Position numbers and translations under genes: made by a program. A stretch of DNA of 64,000 nucleotides from Kudoa neothunni (taxonomy: Eukaryota; Animalia; Cnidaria), in NCBI GenBank assembly GCA_964304625.1, contig OZ199839.1, positions 6,288,490-6,352,489 on the forward strand, read 5' to 3'. The notes beneath the pieces are model-generated. The model was given only the letters and a program-made list of their open reading frames with translations. It had not been told where the DNA came from and did no database searches. Positions 7,727 to 48,500 of the stretch are shown here, in pieces. How positions within the stretch are numbered: the first letter of the stretch is position 1; every line of letters starts with the position of its first letter.

Positions 7727-10700
7727 TCACTTCTTCTTCAATACCACGATTCCACCTATCACTACGACCACAACCACAGCAACGCACGCGATAATGATTC
7801 TACAAAACAGTTAGTTTAATTATCAGCATCTATAAAATATTCACATAAGTTTTGTTTTATTCCTAAAAAGTATTGAATTAAAAAAAGGAAGTTTACTAAG
7901 CTCACCCTGAACTACTCTTTGCTCCTACAATACATAACTCTAAACTACATTATAAACAAATAATAAACCTTGTTGTATGTCAGCACCGCCAAAAATTGTA
8001 TCGTCATGAACACTGTAAACAGTCAAATAATAGTTATTTCCATCAGTTAAATTATTTATTTTGAATTCTTTACATGTCACAAAGGCAGTGCATCTGTCTA
8101 CGTTTCTTCCCATGCAAGATTTTACTACCGCATTTGATTTGACACTACTGTTACGTAACTCCCATTTGCATTTTGATTTATCGTTCATACTGGCTGGAAC
8201 TGTGGTGGTTACAATGAAACTGTTCCCATCACGTGTAATGACGACTGATATCAATTTGGAAGAGTCAGTTGGGTTTACTCTTGGTGTACCTAATATAAGT
8301 TTCGTTGAAAAAATTCTTAATAGAGACATTAAATGTAGTACTCGATTCTATGATATGCTCTTTTTGTGAGGATTTCCCGATAGCTGTGACTAAAATTTTG
8401 TATGCATTTGCTGCTTCATACTCGGGAAATGTTATGGAATTGCAAAAGGGATTTGAAGAACATGTGTTAATGCTGTTCGCAGCACCATCACGTTGTGTAT
8501 CTGAATTATCTGAAACTGACGATTTCGCCGTTGGCATTAGACCACCGTCTGCTACAACTGGTACAGCAATTCTAGCTATACTGAGATCTGCAGAACTTGA
8601 ACTGGGAGGAGCAGCTACTGGGGGTGTCGGTGCTATTGGAGCGGTAACAGATGTGGTTACTTTCGGCACCGCTGGACATGTGTAGAAGTCTGTGTAATCG
8701 TTACCAGTCTTCTTTTTTACGATATAACTACAAGTTGCACTTGGATCCACGGAATTTAATCGTGCTATTAATGACAAACCATCCAAGGTGATCTTGTGTG
8801 TTATTGTTAATGTTGTTAATGCTATAAAAAATTTAAAGAATAAATTATAAGTTCAATAACCTGTTTGTATATTTGTGTAATCTTTTATATCGTAGTCCTT
8901 ATGTGCAATCACTCTGATGTCATAAGCTGTGTTTGGCTCAAGGTCTTCTATCGTAACTTGTTCACTACACATTCCTCTACACGGACTGATGCCATTGCAT
9001 TTCGCATGGTAAAAACTGTTCAATCCAGTTGGACTTACCAAATACTCACAGGTTGGTTCAGTTTTCTTTTCATCATTTGTAGTTGAAGTAATAGATATAG
9101 CTGTAAGAGAGACTGTCGTGTCTGTATTTGTTGGTGTGGTAGTTCCATAATCTTTATTTGCTCCCTTTGCTATATAATTCGTTATTTTATAAAATAAATA
9201 TAATGATTTACTTGTTCTTAGGAATATTTTCTCTTTATAACTTGCTGGAAGATTAGTGCCCTCAAATTTTATCTCCATCATGTATGCTTTCCCCGCTGTA
9301 AGCTCCTGAATCATCAATTTTGTTGTGCAGTCAGTTTTGCAATTGCCATCAATTGCACTGGTACTATCACATTTTGCGAGGGTTAGAGCGGTTGGCCTTG
9401 GTTTATCAGCAAAATAATGTTCAAGAGTACACGTAGTAAATGTTGGTGCAGATGCTGCTTTTAGTGAGGAAACATCTAACTTAACACCAGCGCCGGTATG
9501 AGAAGAAAGCAATCCCTCACTCGATTCAGTAAATGCTAAAGAAAATAATAAAAAAACATATTAAATTACGGATTACCAAATTTAGTTTTTTTGTAACCTT
9601 CCAAACTAGTACCAGTAGCTCTTATGTCGTGATGCCTTGTTTGGATTAAAATTTTAAATAACTTTTTTTCCGCATCGCCAATTAATTCGACATACTTACA
9701 AGGAGCATAACACATTTTACCAGTACCGCCGCAAACAGACGTATATGATTCTCCGTTCGCTGAATCCTGACCATCTTTAATACTGAATAGACATATTTCG
9801 GACGATGGAGAATTGGTGAATTTAATTCCTACCTTGTTTCCAGTTTTTTTAACAACGTAAAATTGAGGATCATAAATATCTATATTTTCCTTCATATATT
9901 GATTGGGCATATAGTAAAAGAAACTGGGATAATTTTTGCATCTCACTTCGTAGTGCGGTAACAATAAATCAAAGTCAACTTTGTTTGCTGAATTCCCATT
10001 ATTACATCCTTCCCCTTTGGTACCAACTTCATATTGGATATCTTTATAATAAATTGGGCAATCTACGGGAGCACAAGTTTTGGCTAGGAACTGCAGCTGT
10101 TTATTATGGCTGGTCGTGTCTGTCTGTGTAGACATGATAATTTGTGGATTGGCCAATAAAGCTAAATTCAATCGATTTTCATATTAAATTCAATTAATTT
10201 ACGTATTGAATATCCGAATACTTTTGAACCTGCTCCTTGAGTTTTATCTTTAATATCAGCTGTGTTTGCGCCTACGAAAACATATATGTATTTGGTTCTT
10301 GGTGATAGTTTTTCATAGGTGATTGTATTCACATCACTATTACAATCAACAACGCAATTATTTGGAGCAGCACTGTCATTAGCACTGCAGCTGTCAATGT
10401 TTAAAAACGCAGCATCTGGTACCGAAGCGCTAGAACTAGTAGCCTTTGCAATTTCTGCCTCGTTAGATCGCCTTATAAGACATTTTTGGCCAATTCCATA
10501 TTCAGAGCCTCCAAGTATGAGTTTAATTCTGTCTGGGTCAGCACCTGAAGCTTTCAAAATCTGGTATTTTAGAATTTTCGTTGGGGATGCAACTGCCGGT
10601 GATGCTGAATTAGGAGAACCTGGATTTAGTGCAGCATTGATTATGCCTGATCCTGATATTAAAACGCCTAAAATTACATTAGTATTAAAATTAACTCGCG

Positions 10701-10741
10701 AAGATACCTAAAACAAGGTAGAGAAATCCAGCTATTTCCAT
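7727..10741 (-). CDS. Gene A: Cys-rich FN3-like type-I membrane protein, multi-exon, apparently intact (about 870 aa)
   Basis: Spliced model: ATG at 10741, signal peptide MEIAGFLYLVLG|VLISGSGIINA with a 40-bp intron, then six domain exons with CxxxC motifs and FN3-like L(E/T)P/AxxxY motifs. Micro-exons 7906-7924 and 7845-7862 precede the TM exon IIIIACVAVVVVVVIGGIVVLKKK* (TGA 7727-7729). The 5' junction, the 8291-8342 junction and the three 3' junctions were read base by base and are GT-AG and in frame. Confidence 0.85.
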
Positions 10742-10786
10742 GATTGACAATTAAATGACTTACGAATTGATGATTCGGAATACAAT

Positions 10787-11023
10787 TGTCCCGAATTCAC
10801 TCATTTGTATATATAATGATTTATTCAATGACAGATAGAAAAATTTACATTAGATAGTAATTATTCAAGTTATTTGAAAATTAATTTAAACCATTTTTTG
10901 TTACCTACCTCAAATCGGTGTGGTAAATTAATTAGAACTATAGCGCAAATAGACAACTGCAAACTCAAAACCAAGATAATGCGAGCAGGATTAACATTGG
11001 GTAAACAATGTTGATCCGCCACA
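10787..11023 (-). repeat. 3' LTR of Gypsy element (237 bp)
   Basis: Minus strand TGTGGCGG...GGGACA with an internal AATAAA. Immediately preceded by the polypurine tract TTTAGGGGGGTTATA downstream of integrase. Confidence 0.7.
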
Positions 11024-12570
11024 TATAACCCCCCTAAAGTTTGAGGGTTAAATTTATAAATGTTTGGTTGTTTAATTAGTCGGCCATATCGAGGTCTAGT
11101 AGGTTGTTTGTTGGGGGAATCGCAGCTTGGCGACGTGCTCATAGAAGGAAGGTTTTCGTTCTGTTCGAAATAAGCTGGTTTTAGCCTATCAATCGATACA
11201 TTAACTATTTTGTTTTTTACCTGAACTTAAAGGTTTTATCTCCTCTAGAAAAAATTTTGAACGGACCATCGTACGGCGGTTTCAGGGGGATCATTGCCTA
11301 TCTCTCCGAATGTAGACATAGTGGCTATTTGTTAGGTTTTTTGGGATGTATGGTGTTTGTTTAATGTGTTTTGAGGTATCAAATAGACAGTATTATTTGA
11401 TGGTTTGTTTTAAATTTTGCACAAAGCCAGTAGGGTCGATGAAATCAATCTTAGGAAGGATTTTACCGGGTGTTTGACAGAGTGGCCGAATACGATATCT
11501 GAGGGAGAGAGCCCAATATCCAACTTAATGGTGTTTTTAATGCCAAGCAGAACCCAAGGAAGTTGGTCTGTCCAGGTGTAATCGGTGAATATTGTGGTAA
11601 TAGAAGTTTTCAGATGTCGATGAAACTTTTTCACCAATCCATTTGCCTGTGGGTGATATACTGTTTTACGGCATAATTTTATTACCAGTAGATTCAAAAT
11701 ATTCTCCCATATTTTGGATGTGAATTGTGATCCTCTGTCGGAAGTTATGATATCCGGTATTCCAAATCTAGAGATCAAGTTGCTGATAAGTACTCTGGCG
11801 CAATTAAGTGTTGATGTATCCACAATAGGAATTGCTTCTGGCCATCTAATGTATCGGTCAATAATTGTGAAAAGGAGTGTAAAGCCGTCGAAGTATGGTA
11901 AATGTCCAACTATATCAACATGTATATAGCTAAAGCGATTTTTGGCCAAGGGAAAGATATGAAGTGTTGAACGTGTATGTTGTGAACATCGAATGATTGG
12001 CATGGTAGCATTTTCTCCCCCATGCTCTTATTTCTTTATTCATATTTGGTCGTATATACCGTTGGATAATTGGCTTCAACGTAGAACGGATCGATGGATG
12101 CGATAAATAATGGAATTGTTTGAACAGTCTTTCCAGCAACATTTCAGGTACCGAAGATCGGTTAGTGCCTATCGATATGTTGCACCAAAGAATAATGTGA
12201 TCGGGACCAAATACGCGTTGAGAAATTTAAAGTTTAATATTTTTTGACAATCCGAAATGAGTGATTGATTTCACTGTTGTTCAGATTTGAGATGTTGAGG
12301 ATTAACTTCTTTGAGCTCGACAGATGGTGGCAACAATGTGAATATTCGTGATAAATTATCCACTATTAAGTTTTCGCAACCAGGCAAATATTGTAAATCG
12401 GTTGTATATTCGGATATAAAGATAGTTGGCGCTGTTGCTTCGCAGTCCAACATTCAGAATTCTTTCATATAACAGTGAGTAGTGGCTTGTGATCGGTAAA
12501 AACAGGAAAATTCCTTCCTTCCAAATAGAAACGAAAATAACGTACTGTTAGAGAAGGCCAAGTTTTGCGG
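10787..12570 (-). mobile_element. 5'-truncated Ty3/Gypsy LTR retrotransposon (RNase H-integrase-PPT-3' LTR)
   Basis: RNase H FTDHKPL, integrase zinc-finger HYLSHP, and core IHVDIVG..TSDRGSQF..YHPQANGLV, followed by a GPY/F region. Stops and frameshifts; no 5' LTR. Confidence 0.88.
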
Positions 12571-13467
12571 ATAGCACGTGCTCAACATGTATAAATTGGT
12601 GACGCGCGAATTACATTGCGTGTAGAATGATGGAACAAAACGATATTGATTGCTTTTATTAATAAAAATAACTTAAAATAAAGATAAAATTTTACATTTC
12701 CCATATAATACCGATAATAAAGCAGATTTCTACCAGTATTGGGTATGTCATACACGAAATTGCAAAGGACGGCTGTAGATATTCCCAGCGTAAAAAATAG
12801 AGAGGTAAGAGCCATTAGACTTGCGTGACGAGAGTCATTTATGGAAATATTCAATAAATACAAATATATTTTTTCTTTAACATTTAATTACTTTTTGACC
12901 GTCGCAATGTATGCTGGGCTTTCTGCCAATCTTTATAACATTTAATTCCTGGCTTGTTAATCTTGTAATTTTTAAGAATTTTGAATTTTATTTTGTTTAA
13001 TTTATATCTATTCTATACTTATTCTATATTTATCAATGTTTCTTTGGGATTTTAATGTTGTATAGTTCAAAATGTTTCATCTTCCTATTATTATTATTAT
13101 TAATATTTATTATTATAGAGTTTCCCAATTAAAATGAGATTTTTTGCAATAAACCTGATATTCATTAAGTTTGATAATTGGAATATTAAAATCTCAAATT
13201 CTGTTAACTTAAATTCTGCGCAGAACAACATTTTTAATATATCGATTTAACAAATCTAATAATAGCAACAAATAAATTTCTTATTTATTAATTATTTCTT
13301 TGTTTTCTGCCTTTCATAAATACTTTGACATCATCCTATAAAAGCTATCACAACGCGAAGCATTAATCTCGTTAAATCTAGATGATATAATTCTTTTAAT
13401 TGTCTCCCATTATTTGTTTCTACCATTATAACCAAATTTTTCCACACGGAAAAAATATTCTCTATAG

Positions 13468-14060
13468 CAGAGGTTCTCAACCGATTTTTTAAAGTTACCC
13501 CCTTAACTTGAGCGCCAAATTCATATTTATCTTATGTTTTGATACTGGTTTACCTATAGCAGAGGCTATTTGAGGGGTAAATTCTGGTCCTAAATGGCAC
13601 GTACGCTTGCATAATGACAATTTTTTTCCCATCAACTCTTACTCACAAGCTGTATACAGATTTAATTTTTTAGTTTTTGTCAAATTAGATTAGTTCATGA
13701 ATATTCGTTTGCTCCAAGGCATAGAAATAATCAAAACTAATGACACTTGAATATTATTTACCATGAAAATAGTCATTTTGAGTATTATTATTATTAGGTT
13801 CCATCACTCAAAGATAAAAGAAACATAAAACAAATAGATTTTAATAGTTTTATTAACTGCTGTTATAAACTTCTTCTTAAGAACATTTTAAGAATTTTTG
13901 CCGAATTCTTATTGAAGTTAATAGCCCTGAATAATACAATTCCTTAGAAATCCTGAAGTACGTTACAAACCTATAATGCAAATATTCCTCCTATCTAATT
14001 TTGAAATTATTTAATTTATCCCCTGTCATCTAAATTCCCCCTCCCTGTTTAGAACTTCTG
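13468..14060. mobile_element. hAT (Buster/Charlie-type) MITE
   Basis: TIRs CAGAGGTTCTCAAC / GTTTAGAACTTCTG. Both 8-bp flanks have a central TA (CTCTATAG / TTCTAGCT) but match only partially. Confidence 0.55.
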
Positions 14061-16124
14061 TTCTAGCTGATTAAACCAGATAAATCTTCTCTCTACTTAA
14101 AAGATATCACTCTCAGCACTGCCTTATATTATTTCCTATTCTTGCATATTATAAATATCTTAAAAAAATTTACATTAATGAGGAAAAATGATTTATTATT
14201 TATAATCATTATTGTTAAATATAAAATATAAACATAATTCATAATTAGAGGTATTAAAAGTTTTTTAAGTTTATTTCGATAACACCATTACACCCTTTTT
14301 CAGAGTTATCCATTTTAAAGTACTCTAAAACGACAGGTGAAATATCTTTTAACGAACAAACAAATGTGTATACATGCACATACAGGTTGTGTAGTTGTAA
14401 TAGATTTGATTTATTTGGTCGATTTGAGGATGGATCATCGAATAAGGGCTTAAAACAGTCTATAAATATTTAATTGTGATAATATAAAATCAAAAATTAC
14501 TTCAACATTCGCTGTGTATATACACAAACTGACATTTTAGATTTTTGTCACCAACTCTTATCGTAAAATCTATATAGTAAATTTTAACGCGAAAATTAAA
14601 ACTTTAATAGATGTAAATGTGTTTAAGTAGTAAAGAAAATTATAGGTCTAGGCATCCTCAGAAATAGGAGAAATTCGTTTTCGTGACAATAGACAGCCCT
14701 GACATGGGTTTATACGCTAGCGTGATAATAGCTACTACCTTAAAAAAATGGTGCATACAAACAGATAAGATGTATTTTGTATAATACTCGAAAAATTTAT
14801 TTTTAAATAGTTTCAATTTAATAATAACCTTTTTCTTAAGGATAAATTTTGATTAATGATAAAAAATAAATTTTTGAAATAAAACCGTAGATAAAATTGA
14901 GAACATTTAGAGTTATTGTGTCTTGTTAATAATTGCATGTGCATAGGAAAATGTTCTATGAGAAATTTTTAATATTTATATGTTATTTGATTTTGCTAAA
15001 TCTTTTCTTTTTATATTCAACTTTAAAATGCAAATTAAGAAAATTAGTTCAAGTTGGTGAAATTGGAGTACCATACATCCTTTCAATACCCATATATTTC
15101 CATTAAAAAATGAAATATGTCTATTGATAACTCAAAATTTGAACGTAATAACGAGTTTAGCGGCTAGTAATTATACAATTTCTTCGCTTTTGAATCATAG
15201 ATATTGTATTTTATATTATACACATAACGTGGGGAGTCGCAGGTTGCCGACCCTTAGCACAATAAAATATTGATCAAAATAATTTATTCCTATAAACAAA
15301 ATATTTTTAGAGAAAGTGAAATAAAATCATAAATATTAATTAAACTTTTTTGAAATTAATGACGAGTTTCGCATAATTTATGTTTTATAATTTCGAAAAT
15401 TTAATATTCAACATTACTCCCATAAATCTTAATCATTTTCAGTTATAGGCGAATGTTAGACTTCAATTACCTTCATATTTATAAGTTATAAATTATAACA
15501 TTAAATAATATAAAAATTATTGCACATAGTTTAATATCGTATTCATTAAGCTCGGTTAATTATTTTCATCCAAACATTGTATATTAATTGAATGATATTA
15601 TTCATTATTGTATATAATACATTTAATGGCAAAACAATAAATAATTTTTTTATGATTTACCTGAATAATGCATAATTCAAAAAGTATAATATATGTCAAT
15701 TGAAATGATTACAATAAAGAAAAAATTTGTCCATGGAACATAAGGGATTCAAATATTTTATTCTCTCATTTATATGATTTTTATTAAAATATAAATTGGT
15801 TTCATTGTATATGGCGCATGCTCGTATATTATAGATGTCCACACCAAGTGATTCATCTAAAAAAGGATTACAAGGGATTATTTATTCAGTTTTTGTTAAT
15901 CCGATGATATTAGTTTGTTTTTCTAAAATATTGTTTCTCACAACCATAATAGTTGCCAGTTAACGGTGATAATCTAGTTGCATCCCTAAATCACCATCGT
16001 TTTTATTAAATATGGAATTTGTTATTAGTCGGCTGAATGAGAACGATCGACGACTTATTCTAATATATTAATAAAAATATCTTTCGTGAATACATGTATT
16101 ATTTGTGTTATAAAATCTCCAAAA

Positions 16125-19100
16125 ATGATTGTAACATCGTTAAAATGGAGATTTGTTACAACATTATATTTGTTTATTTTTTCAGGTAGTCATTTCAATT
16201 AAGTCATATTTTGAATATTTATTAGCAATAATGAGTAAATTTATCTCTACACAAGACATTGATAATAATATAATGAACTTAAGTTTTTCATCGGATATAA
16301 ATAAATACGTTGTTTCTCTTTCTGGTTATCACCTTCAAAATAGCAAAAGAAAGTGTGCACTACAATATTATGATAATAAGGCTTCGTCATTAAAAGTTAT
16401 TCCAACGTGCGCTACGGACATTACGAAGGCAACGGATGATTCCGCCTCAAATAAATGCATCTATGATTGTAAAAAAGTGGAATTGAAATTCAGTTGGGAT
16501 CAAATTAAGGAAATGAAATATCTAAGATGGTGTCAAGGAAAAGATGAGGATGAAGTCAGAAATTGTAACTTAAAGAAAGTTTATAAAATAAAAGGTAATT
16601 TAATTACAAATGAAATTTAGTGATAACTTTATGATAGATATATATGTTAAATCATCATTAAGGGTTGATAAAACAACCGACCAATTTACTATTTACATTA
16701 AAACTAAAATTGATAAGGGATTCAACCTCAAATGTGACTCTAATAATGAAGTTACTCATAATGCAAGTAACAATTTTTACAAAGAACAATCAATTCAACT
16801 AAAAACTAAATCATACCAACCAAAATATGCTGTTGAATTCAATGACAAATCTCCCGAAATATTTCTGAATCCCAAAAAACCTATTGAAGATTGGTTTATT
16901 GCGTCTGGATCAAAATCAGAAGCTGATAATAAGCGCTATTTCACAATAAGACTCCAAAATCCCGAACCGTCCAAGTTATGTTATTTTGGAATAAAAGATA
17001 TTAACGATTTGCGGTTTTCATCTTATTGCTCTATAAGGAATAAAGCTGGTCCGTGCCTTCAACCCTGTTACAAGGCGACATTATTCTATGACTCTGATTT
17101 GAATTTTGCCCAAGTTCTTGTAAAATCAGTTGGAAAGTCAAATTCAAAGGAATTTATTCAAACTGTTTTATGTATTCCTTAATTGTCTTACAAATTTTAA
17201 AAAATTTTGTAGTTCGTAATAATCAACCCACTGACGTTCTTTCGAATAAACAAAATAATCGAATTACAGTTAATCTTTCAGAATTAAATAAAAATGAAGA
17301 TGCTGATAGTGCAGTAGGTGCAGCAAAAATCACAGATGTAAAATTAATAAGGAAGTTTATGGGGACTGATAGTTTTGGAGATAACGTAACATGTGAAAAT
17401 GATTGTACTTCATTCGTTTCAACAACTATAACAGGACTTGAACCGTTAACTGAATACATTTTAAAGTTAAAAATCACGGGACTAAAAGCATTAGATTCAC
17501 CCGAAGTGAAACATTATCACCATTACTTTTATTTCAAAACTAAAGGTAAAACGATTTTTAAAAATATATCTAAATGTTGAATAGGAATTGAGTTTAGCAA
17601 TGGTAAGCAAATAACACCATCGGTCGGCGTTGGAAACACAAAATTGACGTTAACTCCAACTAATCTTTTCACTGCTGGATCTAATAATAATAACAACGCA
17701 GAATGTGAACTGTATTATTCTGTGGAAAATGAGAAATCCAAGCTACCTGCTACTTGTGAAAAAGATTCAAAAAAATTATTTTGCTCAGACATCTGTACTA
17801 GTGAATTCACAATTATAAATCTTGATCCTATTACACACTACAAAATAACTATCTGCTCCAAAGGTTACACATGTGCCGAGAGTGACTCCGTATCGAGTAA
17901 TTTTGGTAAGTTAAATGTTATTTAATTTAAATAGCAAATGGAAAAACTGTTACTATAAATAAATCAGACGATACTGCAGCAAAAAAGATCATTGCTACAA
18001 TGTCTGAGACTCCTAATGGAAATACTGAGAATTCCTGGCGTTATACTTTATTGGAAAAAGATTCCAATAAAATTATAGTGGATTGTCTGAATACCGATTG
18101 TACTCTTGAAACGCAAACAGATTCAGGATCAACGAAATTAGAAATTCCATGGTCTACTGTTGACCCAGAAGTTGCATACGAACTAGTTATAATAATTATA
18201 GATCAATCAAAACCAGTGAAATCAGAAATAACAAGTTGTTAAATGAATTAATCACCATTAAATATATAAATTTAGGGGACGCTGAAAAAGGGACGGGTGA
18301 TATGATTCTAACATACGATAAAACGCAAAGAAATTATAAGGTGAAATTTACAGGTGATTTATTGTCGAAAAGCGGTAAGACATGTAAAATTAAAATATCT
18401 GACAATGCGTTATCTGCATACGTCAATGCTGGTGACAGTAGTTCAGCAATCGAAAAAGATTGCGATCAACTTGTAACAGATGTTACTATTAATCGTAGTA
18501 GTGGAAACAAGCTGGCATATATTTCAGTTACGTATTCGGACACGAAACCTTCATCTGCTAAATCAACTATTGATTTATCAATTTTATCTAAAGCAACTAT
18601 TGGAAAAATGTTAAATGGTGATTACATAAATGAGGACAAGAATTATCTTTCTAAATCTTCAGTAGAAAGAAAAGAAGGTGCAGTCCCTGATAGCACCGTG
18701 GGACCAGAACAAACTGGTCTCTTGGAAGATACAAAAAAAGCTGGAGAAGGAACGGAACGAGATGAGCTTAAAAAGACTGTTCCAGACTCAGCACTAACGA
18801 AAAAACCCGCTTCACCCCCAAAACCGATCCCCTTCACTGCAGGAAAGGTCTTTTCGTACTACATAGGTAATCTGCTTTGATGATGTAATATAATGTTGTT
18901 AAGATTTTTACAATGAATTAACGCATATGGCTGAATTACAGCAAGATAAAATTAAATTTAGTGTCAATAAGTGTTCTTTAAATTGTAATGGATATAAGGA
19001 TGAAGTGAAGGAAAGTTCCTTCCATGGAACTACATCTGAGAATCCCGGTAACATTGAAAGTTACTCAATAAAGTTTGACGAACTAGTTGAAGACTATTAC

Positions 19101-22100
19101 ATAAGTTGCCCAAAATATTTTGACTTTCATTACTTCTATGACAACACATTTGTAAAAAACAATGCACCATTCTTCAATAGATTTTATTATGAATTGGCTT
19201 ACAGTGATCCAGTTAATAAGTTAACGATAAAATTAGTTAACGAAGAGCCTTCTGAAATATGTTCTTTTGAATGGATTGACGCGACTGCATCATCTACTAA
19301 TAGATTTTTCTCAAACACCTGCGATAATAATGCAAACTGCCTTTTTAGTTTGTGTAGTAACGTTACATTTGGAGATATTCCAACGGGTGTAAAGGCAGTA
19401 AAAATACGCGTTCTCAAATTAGGGATGGAACCTATCGTTGGCTATCAAAATAACATTTATATACGTAATCGTTAAAATAATGTATTATATAAATATATAT
19501 TCTAGTGAAACATGGCAATGATACGTCCGTGACTACATCTGATGACAGTAAAATCAAAGTAAATATGAGCGATAAAAATAAAGACGAAGATGGTCAAGCT
19601 GTCAACAGCGCATCTACTGTAGCATGTGAATTAAAAATCTGGAATGTATACGCTCCGTTGGTTAAGGAAACTGGGAGAAAAGCTGCTAATCCATCTACTA
19701 CTTGCATTTTTGGAGAAATGAGTATTACACCAAATCCTAATGATTTGCCAAATGATATTATGATAACAATAGCAAATATACCAAATTATTCTCCTAGAAA
19801 ATACTTTTATCATAAAACTGGTATTTTATGTAATTTTAGGTAAGCTATTTTACTTGTATAGGACAAACAAATGCTCTTTCTGGTGGGTCAATATCGGCTA
19901 CGCCAGCAGCAAGTGGATTCACATTTACTCCAAGTTCTACAGATATAAAAAGCACATGTTCAATTTACGTGCGAGAACATGATAAATTATATTATTATCC
20001 AGCTATATGCACAGAAAATGTATTGTGTATAAAAAAGTGTAATTTGCCGTTTACTATCATTGGATTGTATTCTGGCGCCACCTATGATATTATGATTGTA
20101 CCTAGTGGTAACTATAAGTTTCATATTTTAGAAGGCCAGAAAACAAGTAACAATATTCCGATTATGGTTTCATGGATAATTATAATTAGCTGGTAAAACA
20201 ATTGAATTCCAAATTTCATCTGAGTCAACAGGTAAAAATCTAAAAATAATACCGACAGAAAATATCGAGAATGATTCAAGTGTTGACTGTTATTATCAGT
20301 TTTATATGCATAAAGAAGGGAACAGTAATAATAAAAGTAAATAATCTTTTAATTTGTTTTTTAGCCTCACCAACGAAGATACAAAAGTCTTGCGTTGAAT
20401 GTGAAATTTCAACTAGTAATCAAAAAAAATGCAATGATATTCAGTTTGGTTCAGGCATATATAGTAATAAACATAATTACAGATTAATGATATATGTAAA
20501 TGACCAATCACCACCATTTAAATTAGAAATTCCGGGTAAACAAAATATAAGTAATTTTTGTAACATTATGACTAGCCTTTTCCCGCCGAGGAAAACTACA
20601 ACAAAAATTTGAACAAACAGTTAACAACGATATTGGGAAATTCTACGTTTCATTATCAGAATATCCAGATGGAAATAAATGTGCCCTAAAACTATCCAAT
20701 TTTGAAGATGTCCCTAATTTTGTGAAACCACTTTGTACCTCGAATACTGACAATAACTTATGCATAACTGATTGCACGTCTCAAAATGTTGAAATTGGAT
20801 ATATTAATGCCAATATCGATCGTTATCTATCAGTATGTTACGGTAAAGATGACAACGATGCGAAATCCTGTAAAAAAATTAGAGTTTTTCCAATAAAAAT
20901 GGGTAATTATAATAAATACTATTTTAATAATGCCGTTATACTGGCATATTATAATTCAATGTTTTTAGATTATAATCAAAAGCATACTTATTCTATCGGT
21001 CACATTGATGGTAAAGTTCGTTTTTCCTACAAAACAAACTCAAAAACCAAATGGACGGTGTATGCTGACGGAGAAAAAGACTTATCTAGTGATGCAGAAA
21101 AAAAGAAATTAGATGAAGATAGTTTCTCTGATACAATAACAGATAAGTCTGCAAATTTCTTAGTTGACAGATACATGGGTTATTATAATATTAACTCAAC
21201 ACTTTTGTGGCCAGGAATTTATTATTTTACGAATACTACCCTATTTAATGACACTATTCCCCTAAAATCAGAGATTATATATTCCATTTCAGCCGTTGAA
21301 AATAACATTAATAACTTGAAAATTCGATTTTCTCCTGGTCCCTATAATGACGAAATGTGCCAAATTAGTATATTTGAAGTGGATTCTGCTGGTACAGATC
21401 ATATGAGAAAAGTTTTGAACGTCTGTGAAAATAAAGAGAATGGTTGCTATCAACTTTGTCGAGATTCTGTTATTAACTTCACAGGAAACCATCAAAATGT
21501 TGGTGTAATTGTGAAAAGAAGATTTGATTCGGCTGGTCTCAAACAATACTTTAGAAGTAATTGAAATCCAACATTATTAATAAAATTTTTTAGGAAACGA
21601 TATTGGCTTTAATCTCACTGACATAACGAGTAATAGTGTCAAACTTATTGGGCTTCAAAATTACAATAATATAAAAAAAGAAAATAATCCCCAATGCACA
21701 ATTAAAATATCTAGAGCAAATACTATATCTACTGAAACCATGGCTCAATGTAGTGGTAATGAATGTAACAAAGACTGTGCCCAGTCATATTTGATTACTG
21801 GCCTCTCGGCTGGTACAAGTTATATAATTACAGTAACAGTTACAAACCTTGGTGTGAATAATGATTATATCAAAAAAGTTTTCTTTAGAACAAGTAAATG
21901 TAGCTTGTGATCATATTATTAATTGTATTTAGTTGATGGAGAACAGCTAACAGAATCAAATTCTCCAAACGCTATCATTGCAAGCACTGCTACTATTATA
22001 CCTTTTCAAGCAGACAATTCGTTCTCATTGTGCAGAATTTATCTACAGAAAAAGGATGATTCAAATGCAAAATTTATGGCTTCGTGTGAAGGAATAGGAA

Positions 22101-23120
22101 CCTGTGAAAATAAATGTGACAATCCATTCAAAATTGTTAACCTTGAATTGGGAGTAACATATGATGTTACTGTGGAGCCATCTGATGGCAAAGGCCTAAG
22201 AACCTTCGATATTACTACTAGTAATAGATTTTTGATTGTATTATTATAAAATAAGTAATAGCTAACGTGGATACTTCGGTTACTTACACATCTTATGGAG
22301 ATTATGGTATAGCAATTAATGTATCGTTTACTGACAAAAAGAAAACTTCAAAATGCCCGTTTATGTTGCACGAAAAAACAGATGTTGGCAAACCAGAACC
22401 AATCATTTTTTGGTGTAATGATGACGAAGAAGAATGTTCATCCAACAGTTGTAATATTGGTATCTACGGATTATCCAGGGAAAAAGATTATAGGTTGAGT
22501 GTGAAAGTGAAGGATTTATCGAAATATAAAATTCACGAGATTCCATGTAATTTTGAAATTAATATCTAACTTATTGTTTTTGGTTAACTAATAATATGAT
22601 GTACTGAAAGACTCAAAAATATCCAAACATTCAGGGTAAAAAATATTTCTAAATTATTTTAATATATGGTTTAGTAAATTTTTATGGATTATTTTTAAAC
22701 TAACATACTAGCAGAAGAGCAAAATATAAGAAGTGAATATACAAACATTGACGTAGGTAATATTTTTCAAAAAAAAATTATAAAAATTGCACAAGGGTAC
22801 ATTGCATACTTTCGAACTTTTCTAATATATTTTTAGTAAATTATGATAATAAGCTGTTTTAAAAAATCTGTAGATAGTGAAAGAAAGCACGAATATGAGG
22901 CCGCCAAGAACAGTCATTCGTATTTTAAATAATATTTAATTTTTTAAATTAAATTAATTTAGGTCTGTTGGAAAATATATGTAATGATAATTTTGTGTAA
23001 TCTTTTGGAATAATTCTTTCTAGCTGTTACGCAATGATACCAATCGTAGGAGCATTGCTAGTAGTGATAGGTTTGGTCATGTTCCGAAGGAAACCCCAAG
23101 ACGTTGCTTACGATTTATAA
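16125..23120 (+). CDS. Gene B: large Cys-rich FN3-like type-I membrane protein with three tandem five-domain modules (about 2000 aa), apparently intact
   Basis: ATG at 16125, signal peptide MIVTSLKWRFVTTLYLFIFS|AIMS with a 40-bp intron. All ectodomain introns read as phase 1 and join the ORF-track fragments in frame. FN3-like motifs GLEPLTEY, NLDPITHY, GLYSGATY, GLSAGTSY, NLELGVTY. An 18-nt micro-exon (22963-22980) precedes the TM/tail CYAMIPIVGALLVVIGLVMFRRKPQDVAYDL*. Confidence 0.85.
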
Positions 23121-27814: not shown

Positions 27815-28384
27815 ACAAGAAAATTTTGTTCCCAAATAATTTTCATTATTAAAATAGAGGAAGTTTGCCACAATAAATTTAAAATTATTTACAGTAAAAT
27901 AGAGCGAATATTAAAATAATTAAATGAAGATGTAAAGTTTAATGGGAAGATAAATAAAAAACGGCTCTAAAGAACCCTAAGTTTGTTGGAGGTTAAAAGT
28001 ATAATTGTTTAATTAATGTGATTACTCACCTCCATTATATTAATTTCCCATGTATTTTATGCATTCTAGAACTACACGTAACATTTCCTTTTCTATATAA
28101 ATCTGAAAACATCCACGGAGAAATTTGACGTAATCTGTATAAATAATGTAATTGATTTGATGTATATGCTCATACTGTTACTTTTAAAGAATTCTCATTA
28201 CGTTAAAAAATATTGATTACACAATTTTTCTGTTGTCTAAAATTCTATCTATTTTTGATTGTTATATTTAAAATAAATATGCGTGAATAAACACGGAAAT
28301 TTTATAATTCCAATTAATTCGTAAAATGGGGTAAATATGTTATGATAAACTATGTTATTCATCAAAATGAAGCTTTTTAATAAT

Positions 28385-40474: not shown

Positions 40475-42543
40475 GTTTATATAAAGATGGATAGAATTAA
40501 TTTCTAATTAGTTCAAAAGAACATGAAATACATATTTTATCGTTAATGAACATAATACGTATTCTAATAATAGATAATTGCTATACTATATATTATGCTT
40601 ATAAATCGTAAGCAGCGTCTTGGGATTTCCTTCGGAACATGACCAAACCTATCACTACTAGCAATGCTCCTACGATTGGTATCATTGCGTAACAACTAGA
40701 AAGAATTATTCCAAAAGATTACACAAAATTATCATTACATGTATTTTCCAACAGACCTAAATTAAATTAATTTAAAAATTGAAATATTATTTAAAATACG
40801 AATGACTGTTTTTGGCGGTCTCATATTCGTGATTTCTTTCACTATCTACAAATTTTTTTAATTCAGTTGATTATCATAAATTTACTAAAAATATATCAGG
40901 AAAATTAGGAAACATGTAGTGTACCCTCTTGCAATCTTTACAATCTTCTTTTGAAAGATATCACCTACGTCAGTGTTGGTATATTCACTTCTTATATTTT
41001 GCTCTTCTGCTGGTGTTAGTTTCAAAATAATCCATAAAAATTTACTAAACAATATATTAAAATAATTTAAAAATATTTTTTTTTACCCTGAATGTTTTGA
41101 TATTTTTGAGTCTTTCAATACATCATATTATTAGTTAACCAAAAACAATAAGTAAGATATTAATTTCAAAATCACATGGAATCTCGTGAATTTTATATTT
41201 CGATAAATCCTTCACTTTCACACTCAACCTATAATCTTTTTCCCTGGATAATCCGTAGATACCAATATTACAACCGTTGGATGAACATTCTTCTTCGTCA
41301 TCATTACACCAAAAAACTATTGGTTTTGTATTGGTATCGTCTGTTATCTCGTGAAACATAAAAGGGCATTTAGAAGTTTCCTTTTTATCAGTAAACAATA
41401 CATTAATTGCTATACCACTATCACCATAAGATGTGTAAGTAACCGATGTATCGACGTTAACTATTAATTATTTTATAATAATACAATCAAAAATCTATTA
41501 CTAGTAGTAATATCGAAGGTTCTTAGGCCTTTGCCATCAGATGGCTCCACAGAAACATCATATGTTATTCCCAATTCAAGGTTAACAATTTTCAATGGAC
41601 TGTCACATTTATTTTCACAGGCTCCTATTCCTTCACACGAAGCCATAAATTTTGCATTTGAATCATCTCTTTTCTGGAGATAAATTCTGCATAATGGAAG
41701 CGAATTTTCTGCTTGAAAAGGCGTAACTGACGCAGTGGTTGCTTCTATAAATTTTTGAGAAGTTGAATGTGTTAACTGTTCTCCATTGGCTAAATACACT
41801 TTGTAACATGATTATAAGCTGCATTTACTTGTTCTAAAAGAAACTTTTTTGATATAATCATTATTCACACCAAGGTTTGTAACTGTTACTGTAATTATAT
41901 AACTTGTACCAGCCGAGAGGCCAGTAATCAAATATGACTGGGCACAGTTTTCGTCACATTCAACATTACTACATTGAGCCATGACTTCAGTAGATATAGT
42001 ATTTTCTCTAGATATTTTAATTGTGCATTAGGGATTATTTTCTTTTTTTATATTATTGTAATTTTGAAGCCCAATAAGTTTGACACTATTACTCGTTATG
42101 TCAGTGAGATTAAAGCCAATATCGTTTCCTAAAAATGTTATATTTATATTTCTGGATTTCAATTACTTCTGAAGTATTGTTTGAAACCAGTCGAATCAAA
42201 TCTTCTTTTTACGATTACACCAACATTTTGATGGTCTCCTGTGAAGTTAATAATAGCATCTTGACAAAGTTGATAGCAACCATTCTTTTAATTTTCACAG
42301 ACGTTCAAAACATTCTCTGTTTTATCTGCACCAGCAAAATTCACTTCAAATATACTAATTTGGCACATTTCGTCATTATGGGGACCAGGAGAAAATTGAT
42401 TTTTCAATTTATTATTGTTATTTTCAACTGCGGACACAGAATAAATAATCTCTAATTTTAGAGGAATAGTGTCATTAAATAAGGTAGTATTCGTAAAATA
42501 ATAAATTCCTGGCCACAAAAGTGTTGAGTTAATATTATAATAA

Positions 42544-45516
42544 GGAAGTGGCTATATCTCAGGTAATCAATATCTCTAAAACTACTCAATATTGTTTTCC
42601 CATATTCCACATATCATCTTATATTTATCTAACTTAAGTTTTTGTAGATTTTTGAAAAATTAAAAAAAAATTATTTTTTCTTTGTGTGACCATACACAAG
42701 TCCAACAGTAGCTGGGTGCGATTTTTTATTTTTTTAATATAATTTCATCAATTAACATCATTATGCACAAAATATAGAAATAATAATAAATTTCTGAGTT
42801 ATGTATAACTTGAGAGCGCAATTTCTCTTTCTAATTAGCGTGGCACAGGATGAGTTCAAATTTGTTTGCAATTGGAAAACGATTTCGTTCTTTCGAGAAA
42901 CTCGATAATGCTATAAAAAATTACGAAGAATCAAACTTTTGCAATCTTTATAAATACCAAGCGAGGACTATTTCGAATATTCGAAATAGAATTACAAAAT
43001 CAATTGACCAATCTCTGCGGTATTATGAAATTACATATCGTTGTATTTTCAGTGGCAAGAATAAAACAAAATCCGATGGAATTAGAAACAAACCGGAATT
43101 AAAGGGAAACTGCCCCGTAGTTTTATCTCTTAGGACCTCTGTTGGTGATGTAGCACTTGAAATACGTTCTAGTATATTAGAACATAATCATGATTTAAGT
43201 GCAATGCTATATCGAAATCTACCAAAACAACGAAAAATTGACCTAAATGACCTAAATCTCGCGGAATTAATTCACCTTAGGGCCAATAAAAAATTAATTC
43301 AAAATAAAATTTACAACGAAACGGGTAAAAACATCCGTTTGAAATCCATCCACAATATTAGAGCAAACAAAGACTCATTCTGTGATAACTTATGTGTAAT
43401 AGAGAAAATGTTGAAAGAAGATTTCAAATGTTACTTTAGGATTTTATATGATAATCATAAAGTCGTTAATGGAATTTTATCCTGAGGTTATGTTCGTTGA
43501 TGCAACTTATAAACTCCTTAATTCAAGGTAACTTTTGAAAACGGATGAATAATTTTATAATTTTAGGGCCCCGTTATACATATCTGCTGGGGAGGATTCT
43601 TTTGGTTTGACTCATATTTCGAGTGCCTGCATTCTCTACGACGAGACGGAAGATTCCATCCAATGGTTTTGTAATACTTTGGCAAAATTTATACCAAACT
43701 TATCAAAAAATGTACATACCATTGTTACAGATAAGGATGAAAAGCTAAGAAAATGTCTCAAATTAAGTTTTCCACTATCATCATTCATTTTATGTAAATT
43801 TCATGTGAATCAAATTTTTCAAAGACATCACCTTTAACAAATTTGAAATATCTTCTACTAAAAGACAAGAGATTTTAAGTTGTTTACAAAAAATGATGTA
43901 CCCGACTGACTACAATAAATATTTACATTACGTTGACCAGATTCACGATTTTAAAAATCCCAAATTAAGTGAATATTTCAAAAGAAATTGGGAAGGAATA
44001 TACAATGAATGGGTCATTGATATCAGCAATACGAAAAATCTTTACGACAACGAAACCAATAATCGCCTTGAAGTAATAAATTCCAAAATTAAGTGTTGGC
44101 CAACTTCATCCAAAGTTTTTTTTAAATTCTAAGTTCACTTAGAATTGAAAGGGAAGTTTCTTCAATTAATCAACTGTATTATGAATCAAAAGATATTCTC
44201 AACAACAACCAGGTTCTACACTATAAAGAATGTCTGACGAAGTATGCATTTATCATGCTTCGAAAAGAACATAAATTCTTGGACAATGCTGCATTATCCT
44301 CTAACTCAAATGAAACCACAAGTCGATCAACGTGTCATTGTTTATTTTATCGCTCATTTTCATTACCATGTCGCCATATTCTAAGTTACAGGTTATCAGA
44401 AAAACTCCCGTTATTCTGTGAAACATTATGCAATGATCGATGGAAAAAGGCATACGGAATGAAGTTTTTAAATGCGGAATCTACAACTCAAAATAATACA
44501 GAAAATCTTCCCACTGTTTTTCTTGAAAAGAAACAAAAAATTAACATAAAGACATTTGGACAAAAGTTGAAGTACGCTTCAAATTTTACAACCAAACTAA
44601 CCAACACAACTTCCGAATTTTGCGGAGAATTTTTCGAAAAATCAATAAAATCAATAAATCTATTGGAAAAAATAATTAGAAATCACGATGTCATGGTTAT
44701 CGATCAGTTCCTTGATACATATGATTTTTGTTTATAAATGAAATATTAAATTTTATATAATTAAAGATGAAACTGAATTTCAAGAAAATGTGTAAAATTT
44801 ATAATTTTACTTTAACTAATAAAAATTAGGAGTCATCGATAAATTTAATAGAAATCTCACTTACCAAAATACCAAAACTTAATTCCAGTGATGGTTTTAA
44901 TCCTCTGGAAGAACAAATTGATTGTAACGATGAATCAAACGCCATCGTAGAACCTCAATTAAAAGGTTAAACCTAAAAAAAATTATGCTAATTTTTGTTT
45001 AGATCTAGTGATTCCTTCTAAAGTTACATCGATTGGTCGACCACGAGGAAGTCGTTTAACTGCAATCGGAATTATAAAGAAAAAGAAATAAAATTAGAAA
45101 CTTTAAAATTAAATATATAAAAAAATTTAATTTTGAGAATAATCCTCTACATGTGTCATATGATAGCTGTTTTATTGAGTGATCGCTTAAACTAATAATT
45201 AAATCCATTATTAGTTTTATTTCATATAACGTGAAAAATGTTAATTTCTTAAAAAAAAGACAAACATTATTATTATTTCTATATTTTGTGTATAATGATG
45301 CTAATTGATGAAATTATATTAAAAAAATAAAAAATCGTGCCCAGCTGCTGCTGGACTTGTGTATGGTCACACAAAGAAAAAATAATTTTTTTTTAATTTT
45401 TCAAAAATCTACAAAAACTTAAGTTAGATAAATATAAGATGATATGTGGAATATGGGAAAACAATATTGAGTAGGTAGTTTTAGAGATATTGATTACCTG
45501 AGATATAGCCACTACC
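42544..45516 (+). mobile_element. MULE family A, copy 2, inserted in a B' exon
   Basis: TIRs GGAAGTGGCTATATCTC / GAGATATAGCCACTACC. Perfect 9-bp TSD TTATAATAA. The empty site is visible in gene B at about 21180. Confidence 0.96.
42850..45080 (+). pseudogene. MULE-A transposase pseudogene, copy 2
   Basis: Same motifs and shared frameshifts as copy 1. Intron 43528-43566; additional private indels. Confidence 0.88.
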
Positions 45517-48500
45517 TTATAATAACTCATGTATCTATCAACTAAGAAATTTGCAGACTTATATGTCAATGTATCAGAGTAACTGGTTACAATCAGATTG
45601 CCTTTTTCTGAATTGCTAAATGAGTCTTTTTCTCCATCGGCATACACCGTCCATTCGGTTTTTGAGTTTGTTTTGTAGGAAAAACGAACTTTACCATCTG
45701 TGTGAGCTATACAGTAAGTATGCTTTTGATTATAATCTAAAAAAATTTAATTTTAATTTACCGATAAAATAGTATTCATTTCAAAATTTGTTATAATGTA
45801 AAAAAATAATATTTATTATAATTACCCATTTTTATTGGAAAAACTCTAGATTTTTTGCAGAATTTCGCTCGCATCAGTACCATTACTGCCATAACATACT
45901 GATAGATAACGATCAATTTTGGAATTAACATATCCAATTTGAACATTCTGCGACGTGCAATCAGTTATGCAGAAGTTATTGTCAGTGTTCGTTGTACAAC
46001 ATGGCTTCACAAAACTAGTGAGATCTTCGAAATTGGATAGTTTTAGGACACATTTATTCCCAGTTGGAAATTCTGATAGTCTAACATAGATTATCCCAAT
46101 TTCGTTATTAACTGCTTTTTCAAATTTTTGATGTAGTTTCCCATGTCGAGAGTGGGCTATTCATAATGTTACAAAAATTATTTATATTTTATTTACCCGG
46201 AATTTCTAATTTAAATGGTGGTGATTGGTTATGTGCATATATCATTAATCTGTAATTATGTTTATTACTATATATGCCCGAACCAAACTGAATATCATTG
46301 CATTTTTTTCGACTACTGGATGAAGCATCACATTCAACGCAAGACTTTTGTATCTTCGTTGGTGAGGCTAAAAAACAAATTAAAAGATTATTTACTTTTA
46401 TTATTACTGTTCCCTTCTTTATGCATATAAAATTGATAATAACAGTCAGTACCTGAATCATTCTCGATATTTTCTGTCGGTATTATTTTTAGATTTTTAC
46501 CTGTTGTCTCAGGTGAAAATTGGAATTCAATTGTTTTACCAGTTAATTATAATTATTCATGAAATCATAATCGGAATATTGTTACTTGTTTTCTGGCTTT
46601 CTAGAGTATGAACCTTATAGCTGCCACTAGGTACAATCATAATATCATAGGTGGCGCCAGAGTACAATCCAATGATAGTAAACTGCGAATTACACTTTTT
46701 TACACACAATTCTTTTTCTTCGCATATAGCTGGATAATAATATAATTTATCATGTTCTCTCACGTAAATTGAACATGTGTATTTTGAAGCTGCATTATCT
46801 GGAGTAAGTGTGAATCCATTCGTTGCTGGCGTAACCGATATTGACCCACTAGAAGGAGCAGTTGTTTGATCTAAATTAGTCAAATAATTTGCTAGATCTA
46901 CAAAAACTACCAGTTTTATGATAAAATTATTTTCTAGGAGAATAGCTAGGTATATTTGATATTGTTATCATAATATCATTTGGCAAATCAGTAGGATTAG
47001 TTGTAATACTCATGTCTCCAAAGTTGCAGTTACTAGATGGGTTAGTATCTTTTCTCCCAGTTTCCTTAACCAAAGGAGCGTATACATTCCAGATTTTTAA
47101 TTCACATGCTACAGTAGATGCGCTGTTGATAGCTAGACCATCTTCGTCTTTATTTTTATCGCTCATATTTACTTTGATTTTACTGTCATCAGATGTAGTC
47201 ACGGACGTATCATTGCCATGTTTCACTAGAATATATATTTATATAATACATCATTTTAACGATTACGTATGTAAATGTTATTTTGGTAACCAACGATAGG
47301 TTCCATCCCTAATTTGAGAACGCGTATTTTTACTGCTTTTACACCCGTTGGAATATCTCCAAATGTAACGTTACTACACAAACTAAAAAGGCAGTTTGCA
47401 TTATTATCGCAGGTGTTTGAGAAAAATCTATTAGTAGATGATGCAGTCGCGTCAATCCATTCAAAAGAACATATTTCAGAAGGCTCTTCGTTAACTAATT
47501 TTATCGTTAACTTATTAACTGGATCACTGACAGCAATTTCATAATAAAATCTGTTTAAGGCTGGTGCATTGTTTTTTACAAATGTGTTGTCATAGAAGTA
47601 ATGAAAGTCAAAATATTTTGGGCAACTTATGTAATAGTCTTCAACTAGTTCATCAAATTGAATTGAGTAGCTTTCAGTGCTACACTGTGTCTCAGATTGA
47701 GCTCCAGAGGTGGGATTAAGCTTAACTTCATCCTTATACCTATCACAATTAAGCAAGCATTTATTAGCGTCTAATTTTATATTTTCCCCTTCAATTCTTG
47801 CCAAATGCCTTATCTCCTCGTAAGAATCAACAAAATTATATTAATTTGTCAAATTAGATTTACATATGTAGTATGAAAAGACTTTTCCTACAGTGAACTT
47901 GATAGGAGATGGTGGCGGTGGAACGTGTGCCGGCGTTGATCCCTCTTGTTCGTTGTTAACCAAAGCGTCTTTTTTATCCTCGTTTTCTTCTGTCCCATCT
48001 TTCTGGGTTCCTTTGCTATTCAGATCAGTATCCTGTTTTTTTCCTGTTACCCTTTGTGGGTCACCTGATTCGCCTGATCCATGCCCTTCTGACTCCCTAG
48101 GGCCTGAGAGTGTCGGCCCTTCTGACCTTTCTATGGAAGATTTAGAAAGATGAGTCTTTTCCCCATCTACGTAATCGCCATGGAACATTTCTCCAATAGT
48201 TGCTTTATTCAGAGTTGATAAATTAATTGCTGACTTAGCAGTGGAAGATTTTTCATCCGAATACATAACTGAAATATAATTTAGTTTGTTTTCATTACTA
48301 ATATCAATAATAACTTCTGTTTCAAGTTGGTTGCAATCTTTTTCGATTGCTGAACTACTGTCACCTGCATTGACGTATACAGACAACTCATTGTTAGACT
48401 TTTTAATCGTGCATTTTTTATCATTTTTCTCGAATAAAGTACCTTTAAATCCCACCTTATATTTACTTTGTGTTCTATCGTATATTAGAATCATATCGCC

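What the first reader, a model, noticed from the sequence alone, without database searches (positions are those of the whole stretch)
7727..23120. Unrecognised family of Cys-stapled FN3-like surface proteins built from a five-domain phase-1 super-module
Seen: genes A and B are head-to-head, and both have a signal peptide, a single C-terminal TM and a very short tail. B consists of three tandem modules (about 16226-18230, 18275-20540, 20580-22547). Each has the order: D1 (KCxL/I..DC), long D2 (..(E/K)(I/L/M)C..C..CxxxC), FN3-like D3, FN3-like D4, D5. A has one module plus an extra D5-like domain. All inter-domain introns in B are phase 1. Known: symmetric phase-1 exons are the hallmark of shuffled extracellular domains, and canonical FN3 domains usually lack such Cys sets. 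Inference: a lineage-specific variable surface antigen, adhesin or allorecognition family that varies in module number.
Basis: partly seen in the sequence, partly recalled or inferred. Interest (0 to 1): 0.8.

Follow-up and report, generated by a model that had tools for sequence, protein, structure and literature searches.

The report
Kudoa modular FN3-like surface-protein family
Two real genes of a tuna muscle parasite (almost certainly the myxozoan Kudoa neothunni, a jellyfish relative) encode rod-like membrane proteins built from one or three copies of a six-domain fibronectin-III-like unit; they belong to a family of over 200 genes that I found described in no paper and that probably coats the parasite surface, but their function is untested.

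Summary
The anatomy is confirmed. Gene A (minus strand, about 870 aa) and gene B (plus strand, about 2,010 aa) are open, single-pass membrane-protein genes, and every domain-separating intron is phase 1. B holds three homologous modules. Each module has six domains, not five, because the long D2 exon encodes two. The modelled domains D1, D2b and D5 are FN3-like, as are D3/D4 by sequence. The genome matches Kudoa neothunni. Module number is fixed per subfamily: 63 of 67 B-type loci show all three module markers, and at least 150 A-type loci have one module. Both types also occur in unnamed, distantly related sequence data. A search of 1.84 billion proteins gave 21 hits, the 20 looked up all unnamed; I found no paper on the family. 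All domains are under purifying selection, with mosaic paralogs. Antigenic variation is not shown; the Alr and VSP definitions are not met. B's tail carries two apparent [D1,2] stwintrons, seen in DNA only; no RNA was available. This scan already noted the family and the stwintrons on other DNA of this genome.

The parts
10708..10741 (-). Gene A exon 1: start codon and first part of a signal-peptide-like leader, then a phase-1 intron
8342..10667 (-). Gene A module: D1 10667-10203, D2 (two domains) 10161-9577, D3 9535-9212, D4 9169-8861, D5 with Pro/Ser-rich insert 8821-8342
   Evidence: open frame, phase-1 introns; profile matches to B domains; D5 only weakly
7969..8289 (-). Gene A extra membrane-proximal domain D6 (D4/D5-like; 87-93% identical in about 30 closest paralogs)
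7727..7924 (-). Gene A tail: linker exon 7924-7906, 18-nt micro-exon 7862-7845 between phase-2 introns, TM exon 7799-7727 ending in three lysines
   Evidence: read from sequence, no RNA
16125..16185 (+). Gene B exon 1: start codon and signal-peptide-like leader, then a phase-1 intron
16226..18237 (+). Gene B module 1: exons 16226-16594, 16638-17171, 17213-17545, 17585-17896, 17935-18237
18276..20535 (+). Gene B module 2: exons 18276-18866 (D1 plus hinge), 18904-19464, 19506-19820, 19862-20146, 20190-20324 and 20365-20535 (split D5)
18590..18840 (+). Length-variable charged/Pro-rich hinge inside the module-2 D1 exon (approximate limits; exon about 127-219 codons across paralogs)
20576..22546 (+). 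Gene B module 3: exons 20576-20902, 20969-21556, 21594-21893, 21933-22220, 22262-22546
   Evidence: models
22611..22634 (+). 24-nt micro-exon of the B stalk
   Evidence: same length in all 19 parsed tails
22635..22714 (+). Apparent [D1,2] stwintron 1: G22635, inner intron 22636-22674, rest of the outer intron 22675-22714
   Evidence: DNA only
22715..22795 (+). 81-nt stalk exon under coding constraint (dN/dS 0.20)
22796..22873 (+). Apparent [D1,2] stwintron 2: G22796, inner intron 22797-22836, rest of the outer intron 22837-22873
   Evidence: DNA only
22874..23120 (+). Gene B tail: exon 22874-22919, 18-nt micro-exon 22963-22980 between phase-2 introns, TM exon 23024-23120 with an 11-aa tail ending Tyr-Asp-Leu
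40603..50355 (-). Third family member in the window (B-type, approximate limits), broken by frameshifts and a 3-kb MULE-type insertion in module 3

Best explanation
A and B represent the two main subfamilies of a Kudoa-lineage family of type I membrane glycoproteins. SHOWN: the ectodomain is a chain of about 100-aa beta-sandwich domains with conserved cysteines (7 domains in A, 18 in B). An ancestral six-domain unit with phase-1 borders was triplicated once, before the B subfamily expanded to about 67 loci. The genes then multiplied as whole units and exchange patches while staying under purifying selection. There is no catalytic or signalling tail. INFERRED: the cysteines form intradomain disulfides; the proteins stand about 25 nm (A) and 60-70 nm (B) off the membrane; they work as a non-signalling surface coat and adhesin repertoire that contacts host muscle, matrix or the invertebrate host, with paralog diversity spreading the immune target. 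Incomplete removal of B's first nested intron would give a secreted form.
For: Open multi-exon frames. Same layout in all 20 fetched paralogs. 63 of 67 B-type loci carry the three module markers in order (matched by eye). D2 tree groups by module position, not by gene. FN3 fold for D1, D2b, D5; FN3 Leu/Tyr-corner matches for D3/D4. dN/dS 0.13-0.47 and mosaic pairs. 18 N-glycosylation sequons in B, no RGD. Only 21 outside hits, none named among the 20 looked up.
Against: No expression, localisation or binding data: the one RNA run laid gave 0 reads, which is no test. A-type architecture was checked by coordinates only. Strong conservation of the B layout and of its C-terminal Tyr-x-Leu also fits a parasite-internal cell-adhesion role. 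Disulfide pairing was not read from the models.
Confidence: 0.5

Rival explanations
1. Programmed antigenic variation: one or few paralogs are expressed at a time and switched, as with Giardia VSP or trypanosome VSG.
For: Very large family. In A-type genes the membrane-proximal D6 is 87-93% identical among close paralogs while D2 is about 65-79%. Mosaic paralogs. About a third of the sampled B-type copies look broken. Antigenic variation is reported for another myxozoan (10.64898/2026.02.11.705288).
Against: No domain has exon-wide dN/dS above 0.7, even among close paralogs. No expression site or cassette structure was seen. VSP criteria fail.
Confidence: 0.2
2. Parasite-parasite adhesion or self-recognition (cell-in-cell stages, plasmodium, sporogenesis), working like Hydractinia Alr or sDscam by isoform-specific binding.
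For: Cnidarian ancestry; one exon per domain; non-canonical cysteines in FN3-like folds, as in Alr (PMC9546547); tandem arrays; layout conserved in a distant relative.
Against: No V-set or I-set match for any modelled domain; tails of 3-11 aa without ITAM or ITIM; loci spread over all three chromosomes rather than one complex; no Alr protein among the hits.
Confidence: 0.17
3. Decoy receptors that bind host cytokines or complement, in anchored and shed forms.
For: Cytokine-receptor FN3 arrays and CD45 are among the top fold matches. Partial splicing of stwintron 1 gives a stop before the TM in 6 of 7 genes tested.
Against: These matches tie with generic FN3 domains (Z 7-9.7, 4-16% identity). 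No WSXWS motif in the domain consensus sequences.
Confidence: 0.08
4. A largely neutral expansion carried by transposon activity, with most copies non-functional.
For: Window rich in MULE, piggyBac and Gypsy remnants; 7-8 of 22 sampled B-type loci broken or incomplete.
Against: Purifying selection in every domain; 13 of 22 loci have all 15 domain exons clean; both subfamilies persist in a distant relative.
Confidence: 0.05

Closest known systems
FN3-array receptors (receptor tyrosine phosphatases CD45/CD148, class I/II cytokine receptors, DCC/neogenin)
   Same: Type I topology and tandem FN3 folds; CD45 d3-d4 is among the best matches to D5 (Z 9.4, rmsd 2.6 A, 79 residues).
   Different: No phosphatase, kinase or signalling tail; 4-16% identity; matches tie with generic FN3; six-domain higher-order repeat; hundreds of paralogs.
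Hydractinia Alr family (PMC9546547)
   Same: Cnidarian, single-pass, one exon per domain, FN3-like domain with unusual invariant cysteines, many paralogs and pseudogenes.
   Different: Alr has 1-3 V/I-set Ig domains plus one FN3-like domain that lacks the EF-loop Leu and tyrosine corner, and often ITAM/ITIM tails. Here there are 7-18 domains, D3/D4 keep Leu and Tyr, and tails are 3-11 aa.
Giardia and Sphaerospora molnari VSPs (10.64898/2026.02.11.705288)
   Same: Signal peptide, Cys-containing ectodomain, single TM, short basic tail, parasite multigene family.
   Different: Cys about 3.3% (threshold 5%); 0-1 CXC/CXXC motifs (threshold 6); FN3-like beta-sandwich fold; multi-exon genes.
Taeniid EG95/45W oncosphere antigens (from my own knowledge, not tested)
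   Same: Parasite surface or secreted FN3 proteins in expanded families.
   Different: One or two FN3 domains in a flatworm; no sequence link was found in any search here.
Fungal [D1,2] stwintrons (PMC12403724)
   Same: Inner intron splits the outer donor between its first and second base; both introns are of the genome's normal size (about 40 nt).
   Different: Here in an animal, two in a row around an 81-nt exon; not validated by RNA.

Membership tests
FN3 fold superfamily | Seven-strand beta-sandwich superposing on FN3 domains | tested here: met
   D5 model pLDDT 87.5, Z 8-9.7 to FN3 domains; D1 and D2b Z 7-7.8, which the tool notes may be only a common arrangement
FN3 fold superfamily | EF-loop Leu and tyrosine corner in sequence | tested here: met
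   Invariant L70 and Y76 in the D3/D4 alignment; profile hits almost only FN3 chains in the PDB; 14 of 51 members hit Pfam fn3, best E 2e-5
FN3 fold superfamily | D2a is also FN3 | tested here: inconclusive
   All-beta in the model but not folded or searched alone
Receptor tyrosine phosphatase or kinase | Cytoplasmic catalytic domain | tested here: not met
   Stop codon 3-11 aa after the TM in A and in all parsed B tails; only four PTP-domain places in the genome
Class I cytokine receptor | WSXWS motif and Box1 tail | tested here: not met
   Absent from domain consensus sequences and tails
Hydractinia Alr | One to three V/I-set Ig domains before one FN3-like domain | tested here: not met
   Modelled D1, D2b, D5 match FN3 or generic sandwiches; 7-18 domains
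Hydractinia Alr | Each domain and TM in a single exon | tested here: inconclusive
   True for most exons, but D2 has two domains in one exon and module-2 D5 is split
Hydractinia Alr | Allele-specific homophilic binding | not testable with these tools
   Needs binding assays and population alleles
VSP (Giardia / S. molnari definition) | At least 5% Cys and at least 6 CXC/CXXC motifs | tested here: not met
   A 28/827 Cys, 0 motifs; B 62/1898 Cys, 1 motif (criteria)
Antigenic-variation system | Mutually exclusive expression with switching | not testable with these tools
   No parasite RNA available
[D1,2] stwintron | G + inner GT..AG intron + T..AG, restoring the frame after two steps | tested here: met
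   Full parse in 19 of 21 tails; 81-nt exon dN/dS 0.20 and followed by GGT in 20 of 21; 0 of 287 ordinary introns have both the preceding G and the following TA
[D1,2] stwintron | Splicing intermediate and mature mRNA observed | not testable with these tools
   Holder runs are DNA; the RNA run gave no reads

The most novel reading that the evidence does not exclude
The family is the dominant surface system of Kudoa, several hundred genes mostly missed by homology-guided annotation, used for clonal antigenic variation or self-recognition. In the B subfamily, two consecutive stwintrons, apparently the first described in an animal, act as a splicing switch between anchored and secreted forms.
Probability: 0.15. 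Interest if true: 0.88.

Novelty: new variant of a known kind. Interest (0 to 1): 0.62.

Why it matters
The published annotation of this genome lists 5,316 proteins, predicted from homology hints (PMC12239612). A family of at least about 215 loci, probably 300-450, of predicted surface proteins would be several percent of the gene set. Whether the annotation includes them was not checked. It is the obvious candidate for how Kudoa attaches to and persists in fish muscle, and a source of diagnostic or vaccine targets for parasites that spoil tuna flesh. It is also a clean case of two-level modular evolution (domain, then six-domain unit) that was frozen after one triplication. If RNA confirms the nested introns, they extend stwintrons from fungi to animals.

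Tried and rejected
Sphaerospora molnari as source: rejected; it has 40 contigs and 7 chromosomes, against three scaffolds of 17.2, 12.0 and 11.0 Mb here. RNA proof of splicing: runs X1-X3 cover introns and show no splice joints, so they are DNA; X5 gave 0 reads. The 66-nt D1/D2 intron of module 3 as coding sequence: rejected; it is 64-121 nt in paralogs, mostly out of frame. Single-step removal of the nested introns: gives a frameshift and a stop. Skipping from D5 straight to 22874 (327-nt intron) would keep the frame, so the stwintrons are not strictly required to reach the TM, but that leaves the constrained 81-nt exon unexplained. An all-against-all hhalign run timed out and was replaced by HMMER. 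The first tree included an unrelated ribosomal protein by mistake and was rebuilt. Word searches: 3 hits for D2, none for D3/D4. PDB sequence search: nothing for D1 or D2. ESM Atlas: no TM above 0.36. The outside runs could not be named.

Full report
Source. The window lies on a 40.26-Mb, four-contig genome with scaffolds of 17.15, 12.04 and 11.05 Mb and about 30% GC. The 18S fragment looks myxozoan to me, from memory of primer sites. These numbers match the Kudoa neothunni assembly from yellowfin tuna: 40.2 Mb, N50 12.0 Mb, three chromosomes plus mitochondrion, 30.4% GC, 49-bp introns, 5,316 predicted proteins, almost no parasite RNA (PMC12239612). That paper never mentions fibronectin, surface or transmembrane proteins.

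Gene models. B starts at 16125 and runs through 17 exons to 22546 without a stop; all 16 introns are phase 1. A starts at 10741 on the minus strand and has 7 phase-1 introns over 845 open codons. Both end the same way: a short exon, a phase-2 intron, an 18-nt micro-exon, a phase-2 intron and a TM exon. This shared ending argues for common ancestry. Twenty paralogs at roughly 45-80% identity keep the same borders. Of 287 introns, 92% are 35-50 nt. This is strong indirect support, but no RNA read was available.

The repeat. Pairwise shuffles and a profile matrix show position-specific homology: clear for D1, the second half of D2 and D4, moderate for D3, weak for D5. D3 of module 3 is as close to the D4 class as to other D3s, so the module itself arose from one domain type. 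The D2 exon folds as two beta domains, so the unit has six domains: 18 in B, 7 in A. In a D2 tree, sequences group by module position with support of 97-100, and the A-type forms a fourth group. The triplication therefore happened once, before the B paralogs radiated.

Fold. D5 models at pLDDT 87.5 and matches FN3 domains with Z up to 9.7; CD45, fibronectin, integrin beta4 and cytokine receptors tie. The D1-D2 model (a natural read-through frame given by reference; pLDDT 74) matches FN3-type sandwiches at Z 7-7.8 for D1 and D2b. D3/D4 keep the FN3 Leu and tyrosine corner and hit FN3 chains by sequence. No single known receptor stands out. Disulfide pairing is inferred from near-invariant cysteines.

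Family size and module number. Matching coordinates by eye across searches gives 67 loci with module-2 D2. Of these, 63 also have module-1 D2 about 2.2 kb upstream and module-3 D1 about 1.7 kb downstream. Four lack a detectable module 1 and one further locus has module 1 only; I saw none with a repeated module. A's D2 hits at least 150 places at E below 1e-48, which is the scoring cap, out of 465 candidates. D2-to-D6 spacing is nearly constant in about 40 pairs checked. The floor is about 215 loci; the D2 profile's 594 loose candidates suggest 300-450. So module number differs between subfamilies and is fixed within them. Earlier scan notes describe other, longer FN3-like arrays in this genome that I did not test.

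Relatives. A profile search of 1.84 billion proteins returned 21 hits; the 20 looked up are unnamed singletons from Logan or ENA contigs. Run SRR31175926 (17-23% GC, short introns) holds a near-complete A-type gene ending in three lysines, a B-type middle module in the same exon order, and a shorter one-module variant. Its SNF5 and rps14 are 44% and 51% identical to this genome's, and the two genes are neighbours in both. I infer another Kudoa-like myxozoan, but could not name it. No named myxozoan or cnidarian protein was hit. Eukaryote coverage of these libraries is uneven, so 'Kudoa-lineage' is provisional.

Selection. Exon-wide dN/dS is 0.13-0.47 over all paralogs and 0.22-0.69 among B's closest ones; module-1 D5 and module-2 D1, around the length-variable hinge, are the most relaxed. 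Pairs such as L018/L023 (dS about 1-2 in module 1, under 0.15 in the last four exons) show patchwise exchange. Thirteen of 22 sampled loci have all 15 domain exons clean; 7-8 are broken or incomplete, some possibly by assembly error. Site-level positive selection was not tested.

Nested introns. The lead came from earlier scan notes; I re-derived it here. B's stalk has a 24-nt exon and an 81-nt exon, each followed by G, a complete intron, then TA and a second intron-sized stretch ending AG. The full two-step parse gives a continuous stalk, TM and tail in 19 of 21 tails. The 81-nt exon has dN/dS 0.20, and none of 287 ordinary introns shows the same flanks. This fits the [D1,2] stwintron definition (PMC12403724); the seven papers devoted to stwintrons that the search returned concern fungi. 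Removing only the first inner intron gives a stop before the TM in 6 of 7 genes, a possible secreted form. An exon-skipping route to the TM also exists, so the claim needs RNA.

How it probably works. A leader, glycosylation sites, cysteine-stapled FN3-like rods, one TM and almost no tail point to a non-signalling surface protein. I put 0.5 on a coat and adhesin repertoire facing the host, 0.2 on programmed antigenic variation, 0.17 on parasite self-adhesion or recognition, 0.08 on a cytokine decoy and 0.05 on neutral expansion. Rod lengths assume about 3.5 nm per FN3 domain, from my own knowledge.

Verdict. The family is a new variant of a known kind (FN3-array surface proteins, expanded in a parasite), not found in the papers searched.

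Noticed in passing
window 10960-12560: Ty3/Gypsy-type retrotransposon remnant with an integrase-like frame (12027-11413, minus strand) between genes A and B; broken, observed only.
   Followed up: no
window 28252-32543 and 57285-62633: Two importin-like HEAT-repeat genes with internally duplicated blocks, part of a roughly 29-kb segmental duplication that also copies a piggyBac remnant.
   Followed up: no
window 5138-7058 and 42835-44734: Two near-identical MULE-type transposase copies; the second sits inside module 3 of the broken B-type gene. Another MULE-like frame lies at 52239-54267.
   Followed up: partly
G000:C2:6.21-6.36 Mb: Gene B is one of eight B-type loci within about 150 kb.
   Followed up: partly
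G000:C3:2961522-2977428: Duplicated tyrosine-phosphatase domain 10-30 kb from an A-type locus; whether it has an FN3-like ectodomain could not be checked.
   Followed up: no
G000:C1:13258309-13259023: Two adjacent D6-like matches, suggesting an A-type gene with one more domain.
   Followed up: no
G000:C2:2611533-2645408: Four tandem weak D2 matches (25-29% identity), probably a further divergent subfamily.
   Followed up: no
window 23090-23120: B-type tails end in a conserved Tyr-Asp/Glu-Leu in most paralogs, resembling a class II PDZ-binding or sorting motif.
   Followed up: partly
L036:1942-7201: In the outside run SRR31175926 a family gene lies beside SNF5 and rps14; in this genome an A-type locus also lies about 5 kb from SNF5, but on the other side.
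   Followed up: partly
window 20903-20968 and 22547-22610: Two introns are consistently longer (64-121 nt and 49-66 nt) than the 40-nt norm in all paralogs; no nested structure was seen.
   Followed up: partly
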